Source: Selaginella moellendorffii (lineage: Eukaryota; Plantae; Lycopodiophyta). From it: a stretch of 64,000 nucleotides of DNA. Where the stretch lies: positions 269,102 to 333,101 of the forward strand of contig NW_003314285.1 of NCBI RefSeq assembly GCF_000143415.4, given 5' to 3'. Numbering within the stretch: the first letter of the stretch is position 1; every line of letters starts with the position of its first letter. Position numbers and translations under genes: made by a program. Below, in pieces: positions 6,864 to 52,069 of this stretch. Below the pieces are notes generated by a model. That model had not been told where the DNA came from. It did not search any database and saw only the letters and a list, made by a program, of their open reading frames with translations.

Positions 6864-9800
6864 TTACCACTTGTATCCATACTCTGGCTCGTAAAAATCC
6901 TGTTCTTGCAGCTCTTTCTCTTTTTTGTCGTAGAAAAACTCCATCTCCTTCATGGCGTTGGATTTCACGTAGCTTCCCTGGCTCACCAGCGAGTAGTGAG
7001 ACGAGGAGGAGCTCTTGTTCTTCAGAGCTCGCTGCCTCAGCTGGTAGTAATCGTCACGCTCGCCTTCCCAGCAATCGAGCTCCACCTTCGTCTTGCGTGG
7101 AACTATTCGATCGTCGTCACTGCGCGAGGGCCGAGCTTGCTGCTCTGGCTGATCCCAGCTCTCCTCCTCTCGCCACAGCTCGTCGTAGTCCTGTGCTCGA
7201 TGATCGTCGCTACGTGTTTCCTGGCTTGGAGGATCATAAGAGTAGCGAGCTTCTCGGTGGAGCTGGCCTTGCGATCGCTGGTAGTCTCCAAAGATCTCAC
7301 GCCGCTGGACATAGCCGTCCTCCACAAAGCCATTCCGATCGTCCGGCGGGAACTCCACGTCCGGCCACTCGCTGCTACTACTCTTCGTCCTCGACCACCT
7401 TGTTTCATCGCCACCTTGCCTCATCGATCGTCGACTGGAAGAAGAAGAAGAAGCGAGCTCCTCCATCTTGGATGAAAGTTGATCCAAACTCTTCTCGACT
7501 TCCCGACTTCTCTGGTTTGTCACTTGGATTCTTCCAGGCACGACCATCTTTTCTTCTTGACGAGCTCCTGTTGCATATGAGAGTTGCTCCATATGGGATG
7601 AAAGTTGATCCAAACTCTTCTCGAGTTGGATCTTTTCTCTCTGGCCTTGCGAATCTCTGGACTGGTTTTCTTGCCAAACTTCGTGCTGGCTTTTGCTCGT
7701 TCCTTGTTCTTCTTCCCGGGCTCTCCATCGCTCATCTTCCGGAGCTCCGCGTTGGTGTTCCTGGTTTGTCACTTGGATTCCTCCGGGCTCGACTCTACTT
7801 GCGACCATCCTTTCTTCTTCACGAGCTCCTGTTGCTTCCACCTTTGCATTCCCGGCCTCGGCATGTAAGACTCTACTTGCGACCATCTTCTCTTCTTGAC
7901 GAGCTGCTATTGCTTCTTCCACCTTTGCATTCCCGGCCTCTGCGTTTAAGTTGGAGAGGATGAGATATGGAGAGCCACACCCCGGATCCAGCTCACTGTT
8001 CTTCTTTGCCGCTCGGTCTGCTCGCTCCTTATCGTTGTGCGTCTTGCAAGCCGAGAGCAGCGTCCTCCAGGCCCCAGCAACAGGCTGGAATGGCATGGTT
8101 TCAATTAGCTCCTCGGCCCTGTCCAGCTGCCCGGCTCGTCCCAGCAAGTCGATCAAGCACAAGTAGTGGTCCAGCTCTGGTACCACCTTGTAGTCCTCGA
8201 GCATCATCAAAAAGTACCACCGCGACTCCTCCACGAAGCCGAGGTGGCTACACGCCGAGAACAAGTGGAGGAACGGCACGGCCCCGGGGCTCAGGCCATT
8301 CGCCAGCATCTCCCGGAAGAGCTCCACGGCCTTCACGTCGAGATCGTTGCGCACGTATCCAGCGATCATCGCAGTCCACGCGACTTCGTCCTTGAAAATC
8401 ATCTCCCGGAACAAGATCTCGGCGGTTTCCAGGCCTCCGCAGCTGGCGTACATGTCGAGCAGCGCGGTCGTGAGCACTGCATCGTCTTCCAGGCCACCGC
8501 TCTCCAGAAGTTCCTGGTGGAGGAGCTTGCCTTGCACTGGAGCTGGAATGCTCGAACACGCTGTGAGAGCGCTCGCGTAAGTCGATCTGTCCGCGTAGTA
8601 GCCTTCCAGATCCATGAGTCCAAACAGCCGCAGCGCCTCCCTTCCAAAACCCGACTTTGCGTATCCCAGGATCATCCAGTTCCAGCTCGCCCAGTTCTTC
8701 TCGCTCATCCTCTCAAACATCTCCCTCGCCTCGTCCAGCCTTCCAGCGTTGATGAGAGCTCCCAGCATGGTGTTGTGCGAGACGACGTTCTTGATCGGCA
8801 TGGCCGCGAAGAGCCCCTGAGCATCGCCAAACTTCCCAGCGTTGGCGTACGCGGTGGTCATCGCCGTCCAAGTTACCACGTCCCGGTCGGGCATCCGATC
8901 GAAAACCACCTGAGCCTGATGAAGGTTCCCACACTTTGCGTACATGTCCACCAGCGCGGTGCCGATAGTCACGTCCACCTCCAGGCCATTCTCCACGAAC
9001 AGCTCGTGGAAAGCTCTCGCCACCTTGAAGTTCTTGTACTCGGCACAGGCGTGGAGAACCGTCAAGGACGTAACTCTGTTCGGCTGGAGTCCCTCGAGAG
9101 CCATTTGGTAGTAGTAGCGTATCGCCTCCTTCCCCTGCCCGGCCTGGGAGTGAGCCGTGACCATGGCCGTCCAAGTAACTCGGTCCCGGAAAGGCATCTC
9201 CTCGAACAAGCTCTTGGTCTCCTTGAGCATGCCTTTGGACGCGAAGGCCGAGAGCATGGTGTTCCAAGTCACGGGATCCTTGTTTTCCATCTTGTCAAAG
9301 AGCTGCTTTGCGTCCTCCACATTGCCGCTGCGAGAGAGAGCTTGAAGCATCCCCGTCCAGGAGACGACGTTCTTGATCGGCATGCTCTCGAACAAATTCT
9401 TTGCCTCGTCCAGCATCCCCCGGTGAGCGTAGGCCGCGATCATGCTGTTCCACGAGACCACGCTCTTGTCTGGATTCGCGTCGAAGATCTGCCGAGCGCC
9501 TTGCACGAATCCGTTCTGGATGAACGCCGCTTGCATGATGTTCCACGAGAAGACGTTCTTCTCGTCCAGCATGTTGAAGACGCTGCGAGCCTCCTCGATC
9601 TTGCCGCAGTTTCCATACATCTGGATCAAGAGGTTGCCGAGGTAAGTGTGTCGATCGTAGAAGCCTTCGGCGAGTCGAGCGTGGATCTTCCTCCCTTCGG
9701 CCAAGTTCCTCGTCCTGGCACACTCTCGCAGCGCGTCTCCGAGCTCGAAAGTGTCGACGCACGCAGGCTGGCTGTAGAAGAGCTCGCGGCGGTGCTTGAG

Positions 9801-41844: not shown

Positions 41845-42120
41845 CCTCGCCTGTAAAACCTAGCCTAAACTAGCACCGGGAAGCGAAGCGATCGACCTGA
41901 TCGCGATTCCACTACATACGCACCTCTTGCAATCGTCCCGATCGATGCCGCCAGCTGGATTGATGCTGCGCGAGCTGGATCGATGGCAGCGCCCTGACCT
42001 GATTGCGAGCGAGCGCCGTCAAATCACTTGCAAGGGTTTTACATAGAAGAATTATTGGTCTGCCAACGTGGAAATACGTGGCGCGCAACTAGAAACGTGG
42101 AAGCTTTGCTGGCGGCCAGA

Positions 42121-43826
42121 TCAACCGTCCATGGAGAATACACACTTGATGCAAGAACCGGACGAGAGAAGCTTCACTCCTTCGTTTACTTCTGAGAATG
42201 GTAGCCTGTGAGTGATGTATCCGTCGAGATTGATTTCCTAGACGATCCACGAAAACTTAGAATCCTTCCAGCTTGATCAATCTAAACAAACCTTTGTGGA
42301 GCACATATCGACGAGCTTCCGCATGTCGGATTTGCCCCTGAATCCACCGAAGTATCCCGACTTGAGTTGGCGACCCGAGAGGAGAATCACGGGTGGGAAT
42401 GTCACCATCTCATCGGGCCTGGGAGCTCCAACCATGACCGTTGTTCCATACTAAACAATCCAGGAGGTAATAGTTAGCAAGCACACTGCTGGAAACTAGC
42501 AGAGCTTTTCACTCACGCCTGTGGTGCTTAGCAAAGCTTGTACCAACAGATTAGGCTTGCCGACGCATTCAAAGCAGTAGTCGACTCCTCCATTCGTGAG
42601 CTCGAGAAGCACCTGAGAGAGAGTGAGAGAACCATTAGAGCTCGGGTGATAAAGACGAGAGTTAGAACACACAACCTCATGAAGCGGCGCTTCGTGGTCC
42701 TGTGGATTTAGACACTCGGTCGCACCAAATGCTCTGGCTGCGCAGAAAAAACGCTTAGCACTTCCGTGTATTTGACGAGTAAAACACCAGCTGACCAGCT
42801 TCGAATTTTCGAGGTAAGATATCGATCCCAATTATCCGAGTTGCACCGGCGATTCGAGCGCCCTCGACAGCCTGAAAAGCAAATGATTTCTCTTCCAGAA
42901 CTTTAGGGAAAGCTATAGAGTACGTACTGCTAGCCCGACGGTTCCCAGTCCAATTACAGCAACAGTGGAGCCGGCTTCGACGTTTGCCAAGTTTAATGCG
43001 GATCCCAAGCCTGGAAACAACGATATCAGAGAAGGAATGCGCAAGCAAGGAGGAACGTACCGGTGGGAACTCCACAGCCCAGAAGACAAGCTTTCTCCAG
43101 TGGAACCGGATCAACTTTGACAACCGAGGTCTTGTCCAGCACCGTGTACTCCGTGAAGGTGGACGTGTTCACGAAGTGGTGAATGGCACTGCCGTCAAGC
43201 GAAGAGAACCGTGCCGTGCCATCGAGAGGCATGAAAGGCGTGAACAAGTTCCCGAAGCTGACCTCGCAGTGGTTCGTGGTGGAGAGCTTGCAGAGCTTGC
43301 ATTTCCCGCATTCCCCTTGGTAGACGCAAATGACATGGTCGCCGGGAGCAAACTCCGTCACTCCCTCGCCAACGCTCTCCACAACTCTGGTTGGATTGAG
43401 AAGATCACATAAAAAAAAAGCAAGAGTAAGAAACACACTCCTCAGATCAGGACAAAAGGGGGAATATGGCAGAAGAGAAATTCACTCTTTACCCAGATCC
43501 CTCGTGCCCAAGAATCACCGGATACTTGAGCGTGCCCTGTCAAACAAAAGGATTAACACGGAGCAAAGAGATTGGAAGAGTTTGAGCACAAACTTACCCA
43601 GTCTGCGATGGTGATGTCCGTGTGACACAGCGACGAGTAAAGGACTTGCATGCGAATCTCTCCAGATTTTGGCGGCTCCACATTGATCGTCTCCAGCTCA
43701 AACTCCGATCCAGCGCTGTGGAGAACAGCAGCTGGAGAGAAAGAAGAAAATCACGATCGACAGCCAAAACAAAGTCAAGCGAAGCATACCTCTGCATTGA
43801 ATTGCTCTCCCGACTGTAGACGCCAT
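42121..43826 (-). CDS. Zinc-dependent alcohol dehydrogenase (MDR, plant ADH-like), multi-exon
   Basis: SLCHTD, PVILGHEG, structural-Zn CGKCKLCKLSTTNHC, CLLGCGVPT, GARIAGATRIIGID, GGVDYCFECVG; ends CIKCVFSMDG*. Confidence 0.9.
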
Positions 43827-43974
43827 TGGGATCCGCGCAAGCAGCGCCGGCGACTACTTATACGAGAATTCTCCAGAATATACGCCATCGCTCGGTCGCG
43901 TGGACCCAAGACCGAAACCCTAGCTGCTAGCCATTAAAAGACGAAATTTTAGGGTTCTTGAACTGGAAAGCCCT

Positions 43975-44170
43975 TGTCCCCGCGATCACTCGGCACACCA
44001 GCATCGCGTGGAGATCATCCGCCCCATCCTCGTCCGATAGATCCACTCCAATCGCTCGTTTGTTTGGAGCCAATCGTGTGAGCCAGCGATGATCTCGACG
44101 ATGTTCTTGGACGAGTCCCTGCGGCCTAGCTCCGTCACTGCAGCGACATGGAGCACACCACAATGGTCCA
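43975..44170 (-). pseudogene. Collapsed fragment of a plant C2H2/ADP-ribosylation-like domain gene
   Basis: Two family motifs, AVTELGRRDSSKNIVEII and AMLVCRVIAG, in different frames and only ~70 bp apart. Confidence 0.6.
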
Positions 44171-44320
44171 GCAGGACACCAATACTCTTAGATAATGATA
44201 AGCTCCTTTTCCTAGTTAGATCTGTTTGGTTTGTTCTTCATTTTCTCATGGTATCCCCGATAACTGCTAAGGGTTTTTTTTTGCCTGAATAAAAGCTCGA
44301 TCTTTATTTGGATTGAAATT

Positions 44321-45193
44321 CTATGGCTCGCAAAGATTTACAGCAGAAAGATTTCGAGACTCAAGTTCAAGTGCTCCACGCTCTTGCTCTATCTGCTCAG
44401 AAGCTTGACGCTCATGCTCGATCATACGAAATATATACTGCTGCAGCCAAAACAGATCAAACTCAACGTAGTAGTCACCCTTCACATGAGCAGTGAAAGA
44501 CGACACTGGAAACTTCACCACAAAGCGCTCTCGGTTCTGCTCATTGCAAAACTCGGGACCAAACTGGATCTCCATGGCATCCTTCCCGCTCTCCCTGGCT
44601 ACAAACGTAAACTCGTCACCAGGTCGCGCAATCTTCACCCCGATCGCCACCAAGCAGCCCGACTCCACCCACAGATCCAAAACCTCCCTTAAAACTTCCA
44701 GTGGCTCGTTCTTGTAGGCCACCTCCAACACCGCCCGCGCTGGCTGCGCGAGCGACGACCCGGAGAAGAAGCAAGCGTCCGGCTCCTTGTTGCCGGTGAT
44801 GGTCCGGAGGCGAGACGCTCCAGTGCCCGTGATCACTTTTGTAAGAGAGGCTAGCCCAATACCCGGGATCTGGATGATGCAAAAGATGATGGAGCGCTCT
44901 AGCGCAGATGACACGGTGCTGTGGACTATTGACGGATCCCCATAGGCCAAAACCTCACCCCTCCTGTACTCTAGCCTCCAACTCGAGTCGCAGGCGTCGT
45001 ACACACCCCATGGGACATTTGTGGCCACGACAAATCGTCCCGGCTGCCCTCTGCTGTAGGCGGCAACCGCTTGCTTCAATCCGGCTTCCAAAGCGTCCAT
45101 ACAAATTGCTTGCCCAAACTCCCTAAATATCCAGTAAGATCTCATGTCCTTTTTCTCCTCACTGCAAGATTGATCAAAAGTGAGTTTCATCAT
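44321..45193 (-). CDS. Intronless ORF, putative Uma2/DUF820-like PD-(D/E)XK nuclease-fold protein
   Basis: RLEYRRGEV...PSIVHS, KEPDACF, PARAVLEVAY, LREVLDLWVESGCLVAIGVKI. First in-frame ATG is at 45193; the true start is uncertain. Confidence 0.6.
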   Translation of the reverse strand: MMKLTFDQSCSEEKKDMRSYWIFREFGQAICMDALEAGLKQAVAAYSRGQPGRFVVATNVPWGVYDACDSSWRLEYRRGEVLAYGDPSIVHSTVSSALERSIIFCIIQIPGIGLASLTKVITGTGASRLRTITGNKEPDACFFSGSSLAQPARAVLEVAYKNEPLEVLREVLDLWVESGCLVAIGVKIARPGDEFTFVARESGKDAMEIQFGPEFCNEQNRERFVVKFPVSSFTAHVKGDYYVEFDLFWLQQYIFRMIEHERQASEQIEQERGALELESRNLSAVNLCEP

Positions 45194-45885
45194 GTGTAAA
45201 GATGTGGATCCGGGGGAGTTCTCGAAATGGTCCAAGGACGGTTAACTGGTGCTGATCATCACGCGCTGAACAGATCTGCGGACAGGTTATCCAAATGGTT
45301 GGGATGGAACAAGGTTCACAGGCGTTCATAAGGGGTGGGACATCAACTTGACGGGCAAAAAAGAGCCGCATGCTTGCTACTGGAGCGGTAGTGCTTCTGG
45401 GAACAACCTCCGGCCATTATAGAAACCACATGTAGTGAGTCTATGAGCAAGCTCTCTAAAGACTTGCTTCTCTGGCACGTCACTGATACAAACAAAAGCG
45501 GGACATGCTGTTCATGTGGAGGTCACTTGGAGCATGAGATTCCATAACCGAGTCTTGTCAAAGTTCCACACATTCCTGCTCTAGGGACTTGCTGGAGGAC
45601 TCAGAGTTTTACATTAGGCCTCTTTGAACTTCAACGACGTCTCTTGTGTACGCTTGATCAGCACCTGTGTAGACCTCAAGTCTCCACTTGTGGATGCAGC
45701 TCTATACCTAATCACATGCTGCTACCCGGATTGTGACATTAGTAGTTCCATGCCTTGGCATTGAATCAAAGCTAACCAATCATGTTGCTAGATTTAGCCT
45801 CAAAAGGATGTTCAAGGCTTTGGAAGAATGAAAAGAGAGAGAAAGACAAGAATTTCAATATATGTAAAGGTGGTTCTTGATTTGG

Positions 45886-46248: not shown

Positions 46249-47007
46249 TTTATAATATTTTTGCAACAATTAGCATCCTTTATATAAACAACATCTTAAT
46301 TGTTGTAAATATAACAACAAATATTTTGCAACAATTAACATCCTTTATAATATTTTTGTTGACCATAATACCTTTTTTTTATATAAAGTGTTAACTCAAA
46401 AAATATGTATAGATATAAATATGCTTTTTGATTTACAGAAACCAAGACGTTTTTGATAAATATTGATGTGGCATATTAGGATATCCAGATATTAATATAG
46501 TGCTATATACATTACACATACTTATTAAGTGGAAATTGTTATTTGTATATTGTGAACATCAGTGGTAATTTCTAATCATATTATGAAGTAGCATAATTTC
46601 CAGCAACAAAAGTGATATGTGCCTGTTACGTTGGCATGGAGAGCTTGTTGGACGTAAGCACCAAATGCTATTATTATTGTAATTTTTTTCTAAAATTCTA
46701 CCCAGTTCACCTCTTATAGTAGCTCCTTCCTTTGTACTATTTGCAATATTCTTAGACAAAAGAATTTTCAATTGTTCAATAAATCAAAATATTTATTGTA
46801 GTAATTGTTTTTGTCCCATCCTCATTTATTAGTTTTGCTTGACCATCTTGCCCTTTACTTGCAAGTATGCCATTTGGAATAGCTGCAACCATACTATTAA
46901 TTGCATTAAAAAGTAAATGAGTAGATTCCAAAGATAATACATACATAAAGAAGTAACTTTAGACTAGAATTAATATAAAATATAATACTTCATTTAGATA
47001 TTTTTTT

Positions 47008-50000
47008 TGTGAGTGCATGGAATATGGAAAGGGAATACAGAAAATATGCATATCAATTAACCCAAAAACCCTAGTTTATATATAGAAGCGAGTGGTCTGA
47101 ATTGAAACCAATCCGATGGCTACCAAAATCCCACTACGCTAATATTAGTATACGGCATTGTAGCCGTACACTTGGCCTTACATCATCCCCTCCTTTCGGA
47201 ATAATGGAAGACCATCAAGGTTCTCTTGTAAATGGGCCGGGATCAAGAGGAACGTCAGGAGGAGGCATCGGCAGATCTGTAGGTGGTATTAATTGCTCTT
47301 GATCCCTTGGTATGAAGCGTTTCAACTGCTGCATATGCACAATCTTTGGAGGATTGGCTTGCTAGATGTCATACCGGACCTCATAAACTTGTGGTCCAAC
47401 TTGCCACAACACCTGATATGGTCCTTTCCACTAAGCAAGAAGCCCTTTATATAAACCATATACTGTAAGATGGGGAAAACAAACTAATACCAAGTCATCC
47501 ATTTTGTACTTTGCAGGTGGACGATAATAGGAGTTGTAGCGCTGTTGTTGTCCCACTTGTACGTGGTCTAAGTGTTTGGCAGACTCCGCTCGAACTAGTG
47601 GAAGAATGCTTGTCAAATACTGATCCCACGACCTAGCATCGGCAGCTCGTGGCAATTGCGAAGGTAAACCTAGCTCCATTGGTAATATTGGATCATAACC
47701 ATATAAAAGTTTATATGGTGAAGCACTAACAAAACTCTGCACCCTTGTCACATATGTATACCAAAGAGACGATAAATAACCATCCCAATCCAAATGCTGA
47801 AAGTTCATGTACTTCGCGATCATCCTTTTGAACGTCTAAACGAGTCGTTCTACCAAACCATCTAATTGTGGATGATAATCACTCATGAAAGTGTGGCATA
47901 TCCCTAACCGAGATGTCAAAACATGAAATACCTCAGCCATAAATGTGGGACCATTGTCCGAAAGAATCCACTCTAGATAGGAATGTTGAAACACTACTCA
48001 ATTGAAGAGGAAGTATTCAACAGCAATTGCAAAGGCGCTAACAAGAGTACTAACTTCCACTCAACGAATCAAGTAGTCAGAAGTAATAATAACATACTCA
48101 TTGCTAGAAGTCGATCGTGAAAAAGGTCCTATAAGATCAAACACCACCAACTCAAACAGACGGAAAACTACAATTGACTCCAACCGTCCTTCCGCAGCAT
48201 GAGGGGGAGTATTACGAGCTTGGCACCAAATGCAGTTATGCACATACTGGATAACATCATGTTGCATCTCCGGCCAATAGAAAAACCTGCATAGCTTCTC
48301 GGTCACATGATGATGTCCCATATGCCCACCTAAAATAGGAGAATCATGGTAAGCATGGAGAAACCGTGGAATAAAGATAGAAGGCACCATCAGCCGTAAA
48401 GGATCATTAGGATCTGTCCCCACAAAATAAAGAAGGCCATCTTCAACGCGATATTGAGAATGTAAATGCCAGAATGGCAAGTCATCAACAAGTGATGCAA
48501 GATTCTCAAACCCATCTCGAAACCTTCGAATCCATGGCTCAAGCTTTTGAGCCTCGTGAACCTCGTCAAGAGAAGGTAGATCCTGCTCTGCACCTTATGG
48601 ACACTAAACATTAAGTATAGCAACCATCAATGGCATAGAATCCTTGTCTAGAAAGTTTACAAATGCCAGAATAACAGACTCATTAGAAATATGAGAAGAA
48701 AATGGAGAAGGAAGAGGAGCTTGAGAAAGGGCATTAGCATTACCCATAGAACTCCTAGGGCGATGAACAATATCAAAATCATATATTTGAAGCTTCAAAG
48801 CCCACTGAGCAGTACGACAAACTAGGTTCTTTCACTTCAATAATGAAGTAATGGCAGCATGGTCACCTTAAGTAACATTTGAGAACCATGTAGATATGTA
48901 TGAAGTTTTTCAAAACCCCAGACTACTGCTAAACACTCCTTCTTAGTCGTTGAATAATTCACCTCTCCTGGTTGTAATGTACAGTTTATATATGCAATGG
49001 GATGGCGCTGACCAAGCACGCTCGGGCTCTCTTGCATCAACACACCTCCAAAACCAATATCAAAAGCATCCACACGCAAAATAAAAAATCAAGTGTAGTT
49101 AGGATATGCTAAAATCGGAGGGGTTGTCAAGAGCTCTTTAAGATCCACAAATGCCCGTTCACAATCTAGAGACTAGATGAAAGATGACGTTGATGACTTC
49201 AGCAATGCTTGCAACGGTGTAGTGCAATCAGAAAGATGATCCACAAAACGACCGAGATATTGCACCTTGCCTAGAAAGCGCTGCACATCATTCACACACT
49301 TCGGAACTTTAGAATAGCTGTAAGTTTGTCAGGATCAACTTGCAAACCCTCATGAGAAATACGATACCTAAGATAAGTTGTGTCCTTGGACCCAAACACG
49401 CACTTCGACCACTTCAGCTTTAAACTAACGTCCCGTAGCTGATCCAACACTTTACAAAAATCACGAATGTGCTCCTCCCACGTCCCCTTCGAGTGGATCA
49501 AGACATCATCAATGAAGTCAGTAGTCACTTCTGCCATATCGCAAAGAACTTTGTCCATCATCCGTTAGAAAGTTGTTGGAACACTGTTCAAACCAAACGG
49601 TATCACCAAAAACTCATACAAACCAAATGGTGTACGAAAAGTAGTCTTAGGAATATCTTCTTCGGCCATCTGTACTTGCCAGTACCCAGAAGCAAGATCT
49701 AGCTTGGTGAACCAACGACTTCACCCTAGACGATCTGAGAGATTAGTAATGTGAGGATGAGGGTACACATTCGGGATTGTCACTTTGTTTAATGGATGAT
49801 AGTTGATGTAGAAACGAATACTCCCATCAGACTTTATCACAAGATGAGGTTCACATGCTTAAGGACTCCGTGACTTCTGAATAACACCCTTCTCCAACAT
49901 CTCCTTGACGTTTGCATATAAAATCTTGATTTCTTTGGGTGATCGATGATGAACAGGAACCTTGATTGGACAAGCATCCCTGGTTGGAATCGAATGATGT

Positions 50001-50766
50001 GTGGCAATCTTAGCCCTAGACGATAAATCAAATTCAAAGAGATCAAAATACTCCTTCATGAGCTAGGCCACTGTTGCAGCACAAAGATTGTCGGAGGGAT
50101 CGGAAAAGGGAAGAGTAGAACAAGATGGAAACATAGGAGGAAATAGTGGGGGGACAAAAGTAATGGAAGCAGAGGTAGAAGTAAAGAGACAAAAATGTAC
50201 GAAAGTGAGAGGAATGGATGAAATATAAGGAAGTATGAGACAAGGGGAGAAGCCTTAAAGTTACACTTGGCATGATTGCATTGCAACCAATCCATATTAA
50301 GGATGAGGTCAGAAGCTTGACTCGGCACCACTTGAAATGATTGCTACCCAAGCTTGAAATCACCCATACGCACAACCAGGTTTGCCTCATCTCGTGCACA
50401 TGTATATATACGGCCGTTGCCATAAAGAATGAAAATTAGTTCCGCTGCACGACACAACTATAGACGGCAACGTGTGGCAACAGGTCAAGCAATAGAAGAT
50501 AAACTTGAATCTGTATCAACCAACATGGAGAGAATAATAGTAAACCTCTTGTTATAAAAACGAGCTTGGAAAGTAAACACTGCATGAACTGGTGCTGAGT
50601 GAACCCCTTGATGATACTCCCGAAAGAAAGATGGAAGGGTCACTAACTTATTTGTGCAAGATCCCTCTGTTACTCGCGGGACTCCTCGTTTCCCGGATGC
50701 ATCTTGGTGTCCAGAACTTCCACTACAACAACACTAATAGGACGTTGTGATGCCAAGATCTCCACC
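47008..50766 (-). mobile_element. Degenerate Ty3/gypsy copy (3' LTR 47008-47182; pol with stops), runs into the gap
   Basis: LTR and PR/RT/RH/INT fragments colinear with 58066-61830; many stops and frameshifts. Confidence 0.93.
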
Positions 50767-51530
50767 NNNNNNNNNNNNNNNNNNNNNNNNNNNNNNNNNN
50801 NNNNNNNNNNNNNNNNNNNNNNNNNNNNNNNNNNNNNNNNNNNNNNNNNNNNNNNNNNNNNNNNNNNNNNNNNNNNNNNNNNNNNNNNNNNNNNNNNNNN
50901 NNNNNNNNNNNNNNNNNNNNNNNNNNNNNNNNNNNNNNNNNNNNNNNNNNNNNNNNNNNNNNNNNNNNNNNNNNNNNNNNNNNNNNNNNNNNNNNNNNNN
51001 NNNNNNNNNNNNNNNNNNNNNNNNNNNNNNNNNNNNNNNNNNNNNNNNNNNNNNNNNNNNNNNNNNNNNNNNNNNNNNNNNNNNNNNNNNNNNNNNNNNN
51101 NNNNNNNNNNNNNNNNNNNNNNNNNNNNNNNNNNNNNNNNNNNNNNNNNNNNNNNNNNNNNNNNNNNNNNNNNNNNNNNNNNNNNNNNNNNNNNNNNNNN
51201 NNNNNNNNNNNNNNNNNNNNNNNNNNNNNNNNNNNNNNNNNNNNNNNNNNNNNNNNNNNNNNNNNNNNNNNNNNNNNNNNNNNNNNNNNNNNNNNNNNNN
51301 NNNNNNNNNNNNNNNNNNNNNNNNNNNNNNNNNNNNNNNNNNNNNNNNNNNNNNNNNNNNNNNNNNNNNNNNNNNNNNNNNNNNNNNNNNNNNNNNNNNN
51401 NNNNNNNNNNNNNNNNNNNNNNNNNNNNNNNNNNNNNNNNNNNNNNNNNNNNNNNNNNNNNNNNNNNNNNNNNNNNNNNNNNNNNNNNNNNNNNNNNNNN
51501 NNNNNNNNNNNNNNNNNNNNNNNNNNNNNN
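50767..51530. other. Assembly gap (N run)
   Basis: 764 N. Confidence 1.
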
Positions 51531-51586: not shown

Positions 51587-51762
51587 TGTGAGGTCCAAGT
51601 GTATGGTTACAATGCTGTATACTAATATTAGCATAGTGGGATTATGGTAGCCGTTGGATTGGTTTCAATCCGGACCACTCGATCTTGTATATAAACTAGG
51701 GTTTTTGGGCTAATTGATATGCACATTTTCCGTATTCCCTTCCTATATTCCAAGCACTCACA
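51587..51762 (+). mobile_element. Solo LTR of the same gypsy family, with a 4-bp TSD (AAGC)
   Basis: TGTGAGG...CACTCACA flanked by AAGC at 51583-86 and 51763-66. Confidence 0.88.
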
Positions 51763-52069
51763 AAGCTTATTTACCATTTATTATAATAAAATATAATTTA
51801 TTATTAAATATATAATAAATATATTTTTAAGTCTCTATTAAACTTCCTAAATATACAACATTATAGCCCACTATGCTAATATTAATATACAGCATCATAG
51901 CTATACACTTAAACATAAAAATGTAATTAATTAATTCAAAGTAATAATCAAAGATAAATTATTGCTTAAATTTATATACTAATTAAATAATTATTAATTA
52001 TTTAATCAAAATTATATATATATATATCTGTGTGTGTGTGTGTGTGTGTGTGCATAAGTTAATTTTTAT

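What the first reader, a model, noticed from the sequence alone, without database searches (positions are those of the whole stretch)
44321..45193. Intronless Uma2/DUF820-like restriction-endonuclease-fold gene in a plant genome
Seen: a clean ~290-codon ORF without introns at the border between the gene block and the transposon nest, unlike typical plant families. Its motif order (E-x3-G-E-hydrophobic, P-x3-H, EPD, P-x3-VLEVAY, helix with an aromatic residue, G-x-hydrophobic strand) follows the Uma2/DUF820 PD-(D/E)XK pattern. Knowledge: this fold is mainly bacterial, and related REase domains occur in Crinkler-type effectors of fungi and oomycetes. Inference: a horizontally acquired or transposon-derived nuclease, possibly a toxin or defence factor.
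Basis: partly seen in the sequence, partly recalled or inferred. Interest (0 to 1): 0.8.

Follow-up and report, generated by a model that had tools for sequence, protein, structure and literature searches.

The report
Uma2-like nuclease gene in Selaginella
The spikemoss Selaginella moellendorffii carries an intact, single-exon, almost silent gene whose protein has the fold of the bacterial Uma2/DUF820 restriction-enzyme-like nucleases; it belongs to a small, previously unnamed family found in lycophytes, ferns, fungi and a giant-virus-like contig, which is interesting for gene-transfer history, though its function is untested.

Summary
The ORF is real: minus strand, 44321-45193, 290 codons. 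The conserved start is probably Met32 at 45100, giving 259 codons. The genome is Selaginella moellendorffii.

The Pfam Uma2 match is sub-threshold (12 bits; cut-off 27). A confident AlphaFold model (pLDDT 91) matches all solved Uma2/DUF820 structures far above anything else: 1WDJ Z 16.9, 3OT2 15.5, 6OKH 13.6, 9Y1L 11.6, unrelated nucleases 6.1 or less. H91, K136, D139, E157 and E163 are nearly invariant in 31 relatives.

Relatives are at least 8 Selaginella loci, Adiantum ferns, Mycena and Pseudomicrostroma fungi, unnamed eukaryotic contigs and one giant-virus-like contig. No bacterium gave a credible match by sequence (one weak hit looks spurious).

The gene is syntenic in both haplotypes and shows no transposon features. 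It lies head-to-head with a decayed copy. One paralog has GT-AG introns and groups with fern genes. dN/dS is 0.23-0.48, and the alleles show no indels.

Expression is near zero, and the few transcripts match the sister allele.

Verdict: the fold reading is right. Old horizontal spread is plausible but its direction is unresolved. Transposon origin is unsupported, and a toxin or defence role is untested.

The parts
44321..45100 (-). Conserved coding sequence of the Uma2-like protein: 259 codons from Met32, plus the stop at 44321-44323.
   Evidence: ORF. The start Met is conserved in loci A, B and C, and the allele's frame is closed upstream. The family HMM covers 45097-44345 with score 260. The AlphaFold model of exactly this stretch has pLDDT 91.2.
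45101..45193 (-).
   Evidence: Not alignable as protein with other family members. In the sister allele the frame is open for only 14 codons upstream of the conserved Met.
44918..44941 (-). Motif GDPSIVHS at the end of the N-terminal beta-hairpin and the start of helix 1. It holds D86 and H91.
   Evidence: H91 is present in 30 of 31 members and D86 in 27 of 31. Secondary structure.
44777..44788 (-). Motif KEPD at the start of core strand 2, taken as the 'PD' of PD-(D/E)XK. It holds K136 and D139.
   Evidence: D139 is present in 30 of 31 members and K136 in 29 of 31. It lies immediately before strand 109-113 of the model.
44705..44728 (-). Motif LEVAYKNE on core strand 3, taken as the '(D/E)xK' position, read here as E-V-A. 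It holds E157, N162 and E163.
   Evidence: E157 is present in 31 of 31 members, A159 in 26 of 31, N162 in 29 of 31 and E163 in 30 of 31. It lies within strand 123-129 of the model.
45345..45708 (+). Decayed, frameshifted, 5'-truncated copy of a diverged family member, head-to-head with the intact gene.
   Evidence: tblastn finds 'KEPHACYWSGS' at 45345-45413. The family HMM hits 45347-45487. The frames show stops and a frameshift, with an 'EVAYxNES..L..W'-like stretch in a second frame. Window 45429-45708 is 67-69% identical in nucleotides to the region upstream of the locus-B gene, which carries an antisense C-terminal fragment.

Best explanation
Shown: the ORF encodes a protein of about 259 residues with the Uma2/DUF820 type of restriction-endonuclease-like (PD-(D/E)XK) fold. 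The N-terminal beta-hairpin and the alpha-beta-beta-beta-alpha-beta core superpose on the full length of the solved Uma2 structures. An extra N-terminal helix and a long C-terminal helix are added.

Shown: it belongs to a distinct, unnamed family with its own motif set (GDPSxVHE, KEPD, xEVAYxNES, W, GVKI). The family occurs in Selaginella (at least 8 loci), Adiantum ferns, some basidiomycete fungi, unnamed eukaryotic contigs and one giant-virus-like contig.

Shown: in Selaginella the family evolves by local duplication and decay, with intact genes lying beside broken copies. The intact copies are under moderate purifying selection.

Inferred: the protein is a metal-dependent nuclease. D139 and E157 would bind the metal. 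The canonical lysine position is alanine, so its role would pass to another conserved residue, with K136, K187 or H91 as candidates.

Inferred: the family reached early vascular plants by an old horizontal transfer within a fungus, giant-virus and plant exchange network, and was then kept as a low-level or condition-specific nuclease. The window's own allele is essentially silent in the samples read.
For: Fold: the model has pLDDT 91.2 and pTM 0.85. Foldseek ranks 1wdj, 3ot2, 6okh and 9y1l first, with E from 3.5e-6 to 3e-3 and probability 1.00. VIA-align gives Z 16.9, 15.5, 13.6 and 11.6, with rmsd 2.3-3.0 over 137-166 residues, against 6.1 or less for unrelated nucleases. Atlas fold matches are fungal clusters at TM 0.70-0.73, one partly annotated PF05685, and bacterial Uma2 at TM 0.55-0.56; the feature search agrees.

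Sequence: Uma2 is the only recurrent Pfam hit, at 12 to 19.6 bits.

Residues: the candidate catalytic residues are nearly invariant.

Family range.

Giant-virus contig: TFIIB, TFIIS, C962R-type primase, thioredoxin and DUF5755 pass Pfam thresholds on a gene-dense contig. The primase's nearest Atlas clusters are Nucleocytoviricota, score 0.97.

Residence in plants: synteny in both haplotypes; GT-AG introns in a paralog; that paralog groups with Adiantum at 100/99 support.

Selection: dN/dS is 0.23 between alleles, 0.38-0.48 between loci A and B, and 0.27 between A and C; Fisher p is 0.001-0.007 for the allele and A-versus-B comparisons. The ORF has 2.1% substitutions and no indels between alleles, against 2.9-6.2% and 63-95 gap columns in the flanks.

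Decay: broken copies lie at window 45345-45708 and in L007/L006.
Against: No Pfam, NCBIfam or PDB sequence match reaches significance, so homology to Uma2 rests on a predicted structure and weak sequence signals.

Residue-by-residue equivalence of the active site with Uma2 structures was not obtained. The canonical lysine of (D/E)xK is alanine.

No Uma2 protein has a biochemically defined activity that I could cite.

Expression over the ORF is 0-1.2x, against 50-190x for the neighbouring gene. The few transcripts match the sister allele at 6 of 6 variant sites.

The window allele has Arg at position 53, where 27 of 31 members have Pro.

The viral link rests on one metagenomic contig. Three IMG/VR scans and the BFVD fold search found no viral relative.

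The tree backbone is unresolved.
Confidence: 0.6

Rival explanations
1. The ORF is a decaying or functionless copy. It is intact only because the duplication is young, and it is no longer used.
For: Read depth is 0-1.2x over the ORF, while the neighbour has 50-190x. All six variant sites in the few transcripts match the other allele. There is an Arg at a near-invariant Pro position. Sister copies nearby are demonstrably decayed.
Against: dN/dS is 0.23-0.48, with Fisher p 0.001-0.007 for the three pairs that include the window copy (the locus-B alleles alone give 0.067). There is no indel in 777 nt between alleles, although the flanks have many. All near-invariant candidate catalytic residues are retained. 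Only two RNA libraries were read as raw reads, at about 12% sampling.
Confidence: 0.13
2. The gene is a relic of an endogenous giant virus (Nucleocytoviricota). The family entered Selaginella by viral integration, as proposed for other Selaginella genes by Maumus et al. 2014.
For: One family member lies on a giant-virus-like contig. PMC4083422 reports a 23-copy Selaginella family of unknown function (EFJ10148) whose only relatives are in a few fungi and one chlorovirus; that pattern resembles this family.
Against: No other virus-like gene lies near the ORF in the window or in the paralog loci. The viral member does not group with the window's clade, but with unnamed sequences of which the one that could be placed lies on a eukaryotic contig. 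A paralog has introns and fern sisters. IMG/VR and BFVD gave no viral relatives. Identity with the EFJ10148 family could not be tested.
Confidence: 0.12
3. The gene is carried by, or derived from, a transposable element that uses a PD-(D/E)XK nuclease.
For: It sits next to a transposon-rich stretch. The family is multi-copy. R2-type retrotransposon nucleases appear as weak fold matches, Z 5.1-5.8.
Against: No direct or inverted terminal repeats flank the gene. The unit shared between loci A and B is only about 1.3 kb, namely the gene plus the decayed inverted fragment. Both haplotypes have it at the same place. The paralogs lie among ordinary single-copy genes. No transposase, reverse transcriptase or integrase is fused or adjacent. 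The R2 matches are far below the Uma2 matches.
Confidence: 0.04
4. The protein keeps the fold but is not a nuclease. It would be a nucleic-acid-binding or scaffolding protein that uses the long C-terminal helix for assembly.
For: The canonical lysine of the (D/E)xK motif is alanine in 26 of 31 members. There is a roughly 40-residue C-terminal helix. Catalytically inactive members of the PD-(D/E)XK superfamily are known (my own knowledge, not checked here).
Against: D139 and E157 are invariant or nearly so, as are K136, H91 and E163. That pattern is typical of an active site rather than a scaffold. The decayed copies have lost exactly the aspartate, reading KESN and KELN.
Confidence: 0.1

Closest known systems
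Uma2 / DUF820 / COG4636 family (Pfam PF05685; structures 1WDJ TT1808, 3OT2 Ava_3926, 6OKH, 9Y1L)
   Same: Same fold over the whole Uma2 domain: Z 11.6-16.9, with 137-166 residues aligned. Same order of elements: beta-hairpin, helix with a conserved His, a 'PD' strand, and an 'E-V-x' strand that lacks the canonical Lys. Function is predicted, not demonstrated, in both.
   Different: Sequence similarity is below Pfam's threshold (12-19.6 bits against 27). There is no PDB sequence hit. The family has its own invariant motifs (GDPSxVHE, KEPD, EVAYxNES), an extra N-terminal helix and a long C-terminal helix. It occurs in eukaryotes and a giant-virus-like contig, whereas the 2012 superfamily survey lists Uma2 as bacterial (PMC3424549).
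Fungal 'restriction endonuclease domain-containing' or hypothetical protein clusters of the ESM Atlas (Mucoromycota, Ascomycota)
   Same: They are the nearest neighbours by language-model features (0.94) and by predicted structure (TM 0.70-0.73 over 211-227 residues). They have similar lengths (270-306 aa). One cluster is 23% annotated PF05685.
   Different: phmmer with the window protein did not find them at E of 0.001 or better; only Mycena and Pseudomicrostroma were found. Their sequences could not be fetched, so homology is a lead, not a result.
Selaginella 'EFJ10148' family of unknown function (Maumus et al. 2014, PMC4083422)
   Same: A multi-copy Selaginella family (23 copies) of unknown function, with relatives only in a few fungi and one giant virus, and judged 'likely acquired horizontally'. 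The family studied here shows the same pattern.
   Different: Identity was not established: the supplementary alignment is not held and the accession is not among my hits. That paper assigned no fold or function.
Crinkler/RHS-type effector REase domains
   Same: PD-(D/E)XK-fold domains in eukaryotic conflict proteins. One Selaginella paralog model (P0016) has an N-terminal ubiquitin domain, which recalls the ubiquitin-like Crinkler header (my own knowledge).
   Different: The window protein has no header, signal or other domain. The ubiquitin fusion rests on an unverified gene model that also swallows an SMP-C2 gene. No Crinkler-related family was hit in Pfam. The structural neighbours are Uma2 proteins, not other REase families.

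Membership tests
Uma2/DUF820 (Pfam PF05685) | Sequence match to the family HMM at or above Pfam's gathering score (27 bits) | tested here: not met
   The window protein scores 12 bits, E 0.14. The best family members, P0024 and P0035, score 19.6 and 19 bits. NCBIfam gives none.
Uma2/DUF820 (Pfam PF05685) | The fold of the solved family members (1WDJ, 3OT2): an N-terminal hairpin plus the restriction-endonuclease-like core | tested here: met
   Foldseek ranks 1-7 are all Uma2/DUF820 chains with probability 1.00. VIA-align gives Z 16.9, 15.5, 13.6 and 11.6, covering residues 2-187 of 1WDJ. The model has pLDDT 91.2.
Uma2/DUF820 (Pfam PF05685) | Conserved active-site pattern: a His on helix 1, a PD strand, and an E-V-x strand without the canonical Lys | tested here: inconclusive
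   The pattern is present and nearly invariant within this family, on the expected secondary-structure elements.
Uma2/DUF820 (Pfam PF05685) | Bacterial distribution, expanded in cyanobacteria (PMC3424549) | tested here: not met
   All credible relatives by sequence are eukaryotic or from a giant-virus-like contig. The one bacterial hit, P0022, is a STAND/TPR protein matched in six short stretches and is probably spurious.
PD-(D/E)XK phosphodiesterase superfamily | Catalytic D on strand 2 and (D/E)-x-K on strand 3 | tested here: inconclusive
   D139 (30 of 31 members) and E157 (31 of 31) are in place. The K position is Ala in 26 of 31 members. K136 (29 of 31) and K187 (22 of 31) are candidates for a relocated lysine.
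PD-(D/E)XK phosphodiesterase superfamily | Metal-dependent phosphodiester cleavage | not testable with these tools
   This needs purified protein and D139A/E157A controls.
Transposable-element-borne nuclease | Defined element termini (TIR or LTR), target-site duplication and an associated transposition gene | tested here: not met
   No repeats flank the gene. The shared unit between loci is about 1.3 kb. The position is syntenic in both haplotypes.
Endogenous giant-virus (Nucleocytoviricota) insertion | Physical clustering with other virus-derived genes, or nesting of the host genes within viral clades | tested here: not met
   The neighbours are ordinary plant genes. In the tree the viral member is not sister to the window clade.
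Crinkler/RHS-type effector | An N-terminal header or trafficking domain followed by a C-terminal toxin module | tested here: not met
   It is a single-domain protein with no other Pfam domain. The ubiquitin-bearing paralog model is unverified.

The most novel reading that the evidence does not exclude
This is a eukaryote and giant-virus branch of the Uma2 nucleases that moved among fungi, giant viruses and early vascular plants. In lycophytes and ferns it would have been domesticated as a rapidly turning-over nuclease family used in genome conflict (against viruses or mobile DNA), switched on only under attack or in particular cells. That would be a plant counterpart of the bacterial Uma2 modules found next to antitoxin and HTH domains.
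Probability: 0.15. Interest if true: 0.7.

Novelty: new variant of a known kind. Interest (0 to 1): 0.5.

Why it matters
Uma2/DUF820 is a large family of predicted nucleases with no defined function. The main survey of the PD-(D/E)XK superfamily lists it as bacterial only.

This work shows a divergent branch that standard annotation misses: Pfam gives no significant hit, and the gene is deposited as 'hypothetical protein'. That branch lives in seed-free vascular plants, fungi and at least one giant-virus-like genome. It gives a fold and a testable active site to a set of orphan plant genes.

It also adds a case to the growing list of genes shared among Selaginella, fungi and giant viruses, which bears on whether giant viruses once infected land-plant ancestors.

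The practical importance is modest. The window copy is nearly silent, and neither the activity nor the direction of transfer is established.

Tried and rejected
- **First structure prediction.** With only 5 near-identical sequences it failed (pLDDT 34). It was replaced by a 31-sequence alignment.
- **PDB sequence searches.** Neither the protein nor the family profile gave anything meaningful.
- **NCBIfam and PADLOC.** No hits.
- **Word-indexed profile search.** It added only Mycena proteins and was capped at 8000 candidates.
- **IMG/VR scans.** P0019, a 5-sequence sub-alignment and the L001 primase found no relatives. The full alignment was too diverse for that tool.
- **BFVD fold search.** Only generic weak PD-(D/E)XK matches.
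- **Fetching true Uma2 sequences for a profile-profile test.** The first 50 kb of Nostoc plasmid pCC7120alpha holds no annotated Uma2 gene. tblastn of the core against all plasmids at E up to 10 found nothing. The third large protein search was not spent on this, because the fold evidence was already clear.
- **Model coordinates.** They are not exposed to scripts, so 3D clustering of the conserved residues could not be measured.
- **P0022.** This bacterial STAND/TPR protein was rejected as a probable spurious repeat match.
- **P0016.** Its ubiquitin/SMP/C2 architecture was judged likely to be at least partly a merged gene model.
- **N-terminal 'exons' of the deposited models.** Those of P0001 and of P0003/P0004 overlap, on the opposite strand, the decayed inverted copy, so they were not accepted as real.
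- **Maumus et al. supplementary alignment.** It is not held.
- **Sequence look-up in the scan's findings.** Blank, which per the operators means nothing.
- **Complex prediction.** Not run, since the report does not claim a binding partner.

Full report
**1. Observation.** The window is from Selaginella moellendorffii. The ORF's product is 99% identical to the deposited 'hypothetical protein SELMODRAFT_414527'. On the minus strand an open frame runs from 45235 (TTG) or 45193 (ATG) to the stop at 44321-44323, which is 290 codons from the ATG. The gene lies between a spliced, well expressed ADH-type gene that ends near 43814 and AT-rich DNA with a retroelement integrase ORF. The true start is probably Met32 (45100). 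This Met is conserved in the three closest loci, and in the sister allele the frame is closed 14 codons upstream of it.

**2. What the protein is.** Sequence methods alone leave it open:
- Pfam Uma2 scores 12 bits (E 0.14), against a cut-off of 27.
- NCBIfam gives nothing.
- PDB sequence searches give nothing, with either the protein or the family profile.

An exhaustive phmmer search of 1.84 billion cluster representatives found 26 proteins. With 31 of these relatives as the alignment, AlphaFold gave a confident model (pLDDT 91.2, pTM 0.85). An earlier attempt with 5 sequences had failed.

Foldseek against the PDB puts the solved Uma2/DUF820 structures in ranks 1-7: 1WDJ, 3OT2, 6OKH and 9Y1L, with E from 3.5e-6 to 3e-3 and probability 1.00. 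The independent aligner gives the following:

| Structure | Z |
|---|---|
| 1WDJ | 16.9 (rmsd 2.3 Å, 166 of 186 residues, chain residues 2-187) |
| 3OT2 | 15.5 |
| 6OKH | 13.6 |
| 9Y1L | 11.6 |
| 3IJM (another restriction-endonuclease-like fold protein) | 8.8 |
| Best other nuclease | 6.1 |

Uma2 is also the only Pfam family that recurs among family members, at 12 to 19.6 bits and covering profile positions 17-125 of 172. The ESM Atlas gives fungal clusters as nearest neighbours by features (0.94) and by shape (TM 0.70-0.73). One of these is partly annotated PF05685, and bacterial Uma2 clusters follow at TM 0.55-0.56. By Pfam's own criterion the protein is not a member of PF05685; it is a divergent sister group.

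**3. Active site.**
- In the model, the KEPD aspartate (D139) sits at the start of core strand 2.
- The glutamate of LEVAY (E157) sits in strand 3. The canonical PD and (D/E)xK positions are usually on these two strands (that usual placement is my own knowledge); the secondary structure is.
- Across 31 members, E157 is invariant. D139 is in 30, H91 in 30, E163 in 30, K136 in 29 and N162 in 29.
- The canonical lysine position is alanine in 26 of 31 members.
- That the protein is a metal-dependent nuclease with a relocated basic residue is an inference. I could not superpose residues, because coordinates are not exposed. I could not run a profile-profile comparison either, because no true Uma2 sequences were obtainable.
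- The decayed paralogs have lost exactly the aspartate, reading KESN and KELN.
- The window allele carries Arg53, where 27 of 31 members, including its sister allele, have Pro.

**4. Family range.** Named relatives are as follows:
- At least 8 Selaginella loci, most with two haplotype copies.
- Four Adiantum fern proteins.
- Three Mycena proteins.
- One Pseudomicrostroma protein.

Unnamed relatives lie on three kinds of contig:
- Eukaryotic-looking contigs, with fragmented JmjC or CEP76 genes.
- A contig with RtcB and DUF7487.
- A gene-dense 16-kb metagenomic contig (L001) carrying TFIIB, TFIIS, a C962R-type primase, thioredoxin and DUF5755, all above Pfam thresholds. The primase's nearest Atlas clusters are Nucleocytoviricota at 0.97, so I read L001 as a giant-virus contig.

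No seed plant, moss or credible bacterium was hit. The one bacterial hit, P0022, looks spurious. IMG/VR and BFVD gave no further viral members.

The 2012 superfamily survey lists Uma2 as bacterial (PMC3424549). Maumus et al. 2014 (PMC4083422) describe a 23-copy Selaginella family of unknown function, EFJ10148. Its relatives occur only in a few fungi and one chlorovirus. This may be the same family, but I could not test it.

**5. History within Selaginella.**
- The sister allele (L008) has the same neighbours: ADH, an ABC transporter and a BAHD transferase.
- Locus B (L007/L006) lies between the DNA polymerase alpha B subunit gene and a PDI-like gene.
- Locus C (L009) lies between cytochrome b5 and FtsZ.
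- No repeats flank the gene.
- The unit shared between loci A and B is only the core ORF (91-93% nt identity) plus about 280 nt upstream (67-69%).
- That upstream block is a decayed, frameshifted, 5'-truncated inverted copy of a diverged family member, at window 45345-45708 on the plus strand.
- Locus B holds in addition a third, broken copy.
- A further paralog (L013) has two GT-AG introns inside the domain. It groups with Adiantum genes at 100/99 support, while the backbone of the tree is unresolved.

Together this indicates long residence in vascular plants and birth-and-death evolution, not a recent insertion or a transposon.

**6. Selection and expression.**
- dN/dS is 0.23 between alleles, 0.38-0.48 between loci A and B, and 0.27 against locus C, where dS is saturated. 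Fisher p is 0.001-0.007 for the three pairs that include the window copy and 0.067 for the locus-B alleles alone.
- Between alleles the ORF has 2.1% substitutions and no indel in 777 nt. The flanks have 2.9-6.2% substitutions and 63-95 gap columns.
- In two raw RNA-seq runs the ADH neighbour has 50-190x depth with clean splicing. The ORF has 0-1.2x.
- The small contigs over the ORF in two older runs carry six variants, all matching the sister allele.

So the locus is constrained but barely transcribed in the samples read, and nothing shows that the window's own allele is expressed.

**7. Verdict.** The fold interpretation is supported. Horizontal origin is plausible but old and of unresolved direction. 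Transposon origin is not supported. A toxin or defence role is untested, with no PADLOC match. I class this as a new variant of a known kind and score interest at 0.5. An earlier follow-up of this scan (s1-432158) reached a similar reading for a gene on another piece of this genome. I could not establish whether it is the same family.

Noticed in passing
window 43963-44264: RNA reads lie here at 3-7x, but every read carries the same mismatches (43999, 44097, 44120), and reads run on into unrelated sequence at 43977, 44088 and 44138. This looks like fragments of exons of a gene that is expressed from another locus. No Pfam family was found in the local ORFs.
   Followed up: partly
window 42000-43814 (minus strand): The ADH-type neighbour is strongly expressed, with 50-106-nt GT-AG introns. 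It shows alternative or allele-specific acceptor use at 42450>42517/42519/42520 and 42737/42738>42796/42801. Both haplotype variants are visible in the reads.
   Followed up: no
L013 3001-4453: A Selaginella paralog (P0016) has two canonical introns inside the Uma2-like domain. Its gene model has an N-terminal ubiquitin domain (59 bits), with the ubiquitin and Uma2-like parts lying on separate exons joined by predicted introns. The same model also swallows an SMP-C2 gene. A real ubiquitin-nuclease fusion would be of interest, but it is unverified.
   Followed up: partly
L007 8899-9669 and L006 9028-9971 (minus strand): An unannotated third family copy lies tail-to-tail with the locus-B gene. 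It is broken by stops in both haplotypes, and the catalytic Asp is replaced (KESN, KELN).
   Followed up: yes
L001 (ENA ERZ22827514, 16-kb contig, about 56% GC): A gene-dense giant-virus-like contig with TFIIB, TFIIS, a C962R-type primase, thioredoxin, DUF5755 and a family member (P0019). Most of its other ORFs have no Pfam family.
   Followed up: partly
window about 50750-51500: A run of N (an assembly gap) lies inside the AT-rich transposon stretch. ORFs listed there are artefacts.
   Followed up: no
window 47006-47175 and 51595-51764: 170-nt inverted repeat arms (89% complementary, 4.4 kb apart) lie in the transposon stretch and enclose the integrase ORFs and the gap. They are possibly element termini and are unrelated to the nuclease gene.
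   Followed up: no
L002 and L011: Two unnamed family members (P0011, P0023) both lie next to JmjC-domain gene fragments. This suggests conserved synteny in two related, unidentified eukaryotes.
   Followed up: no
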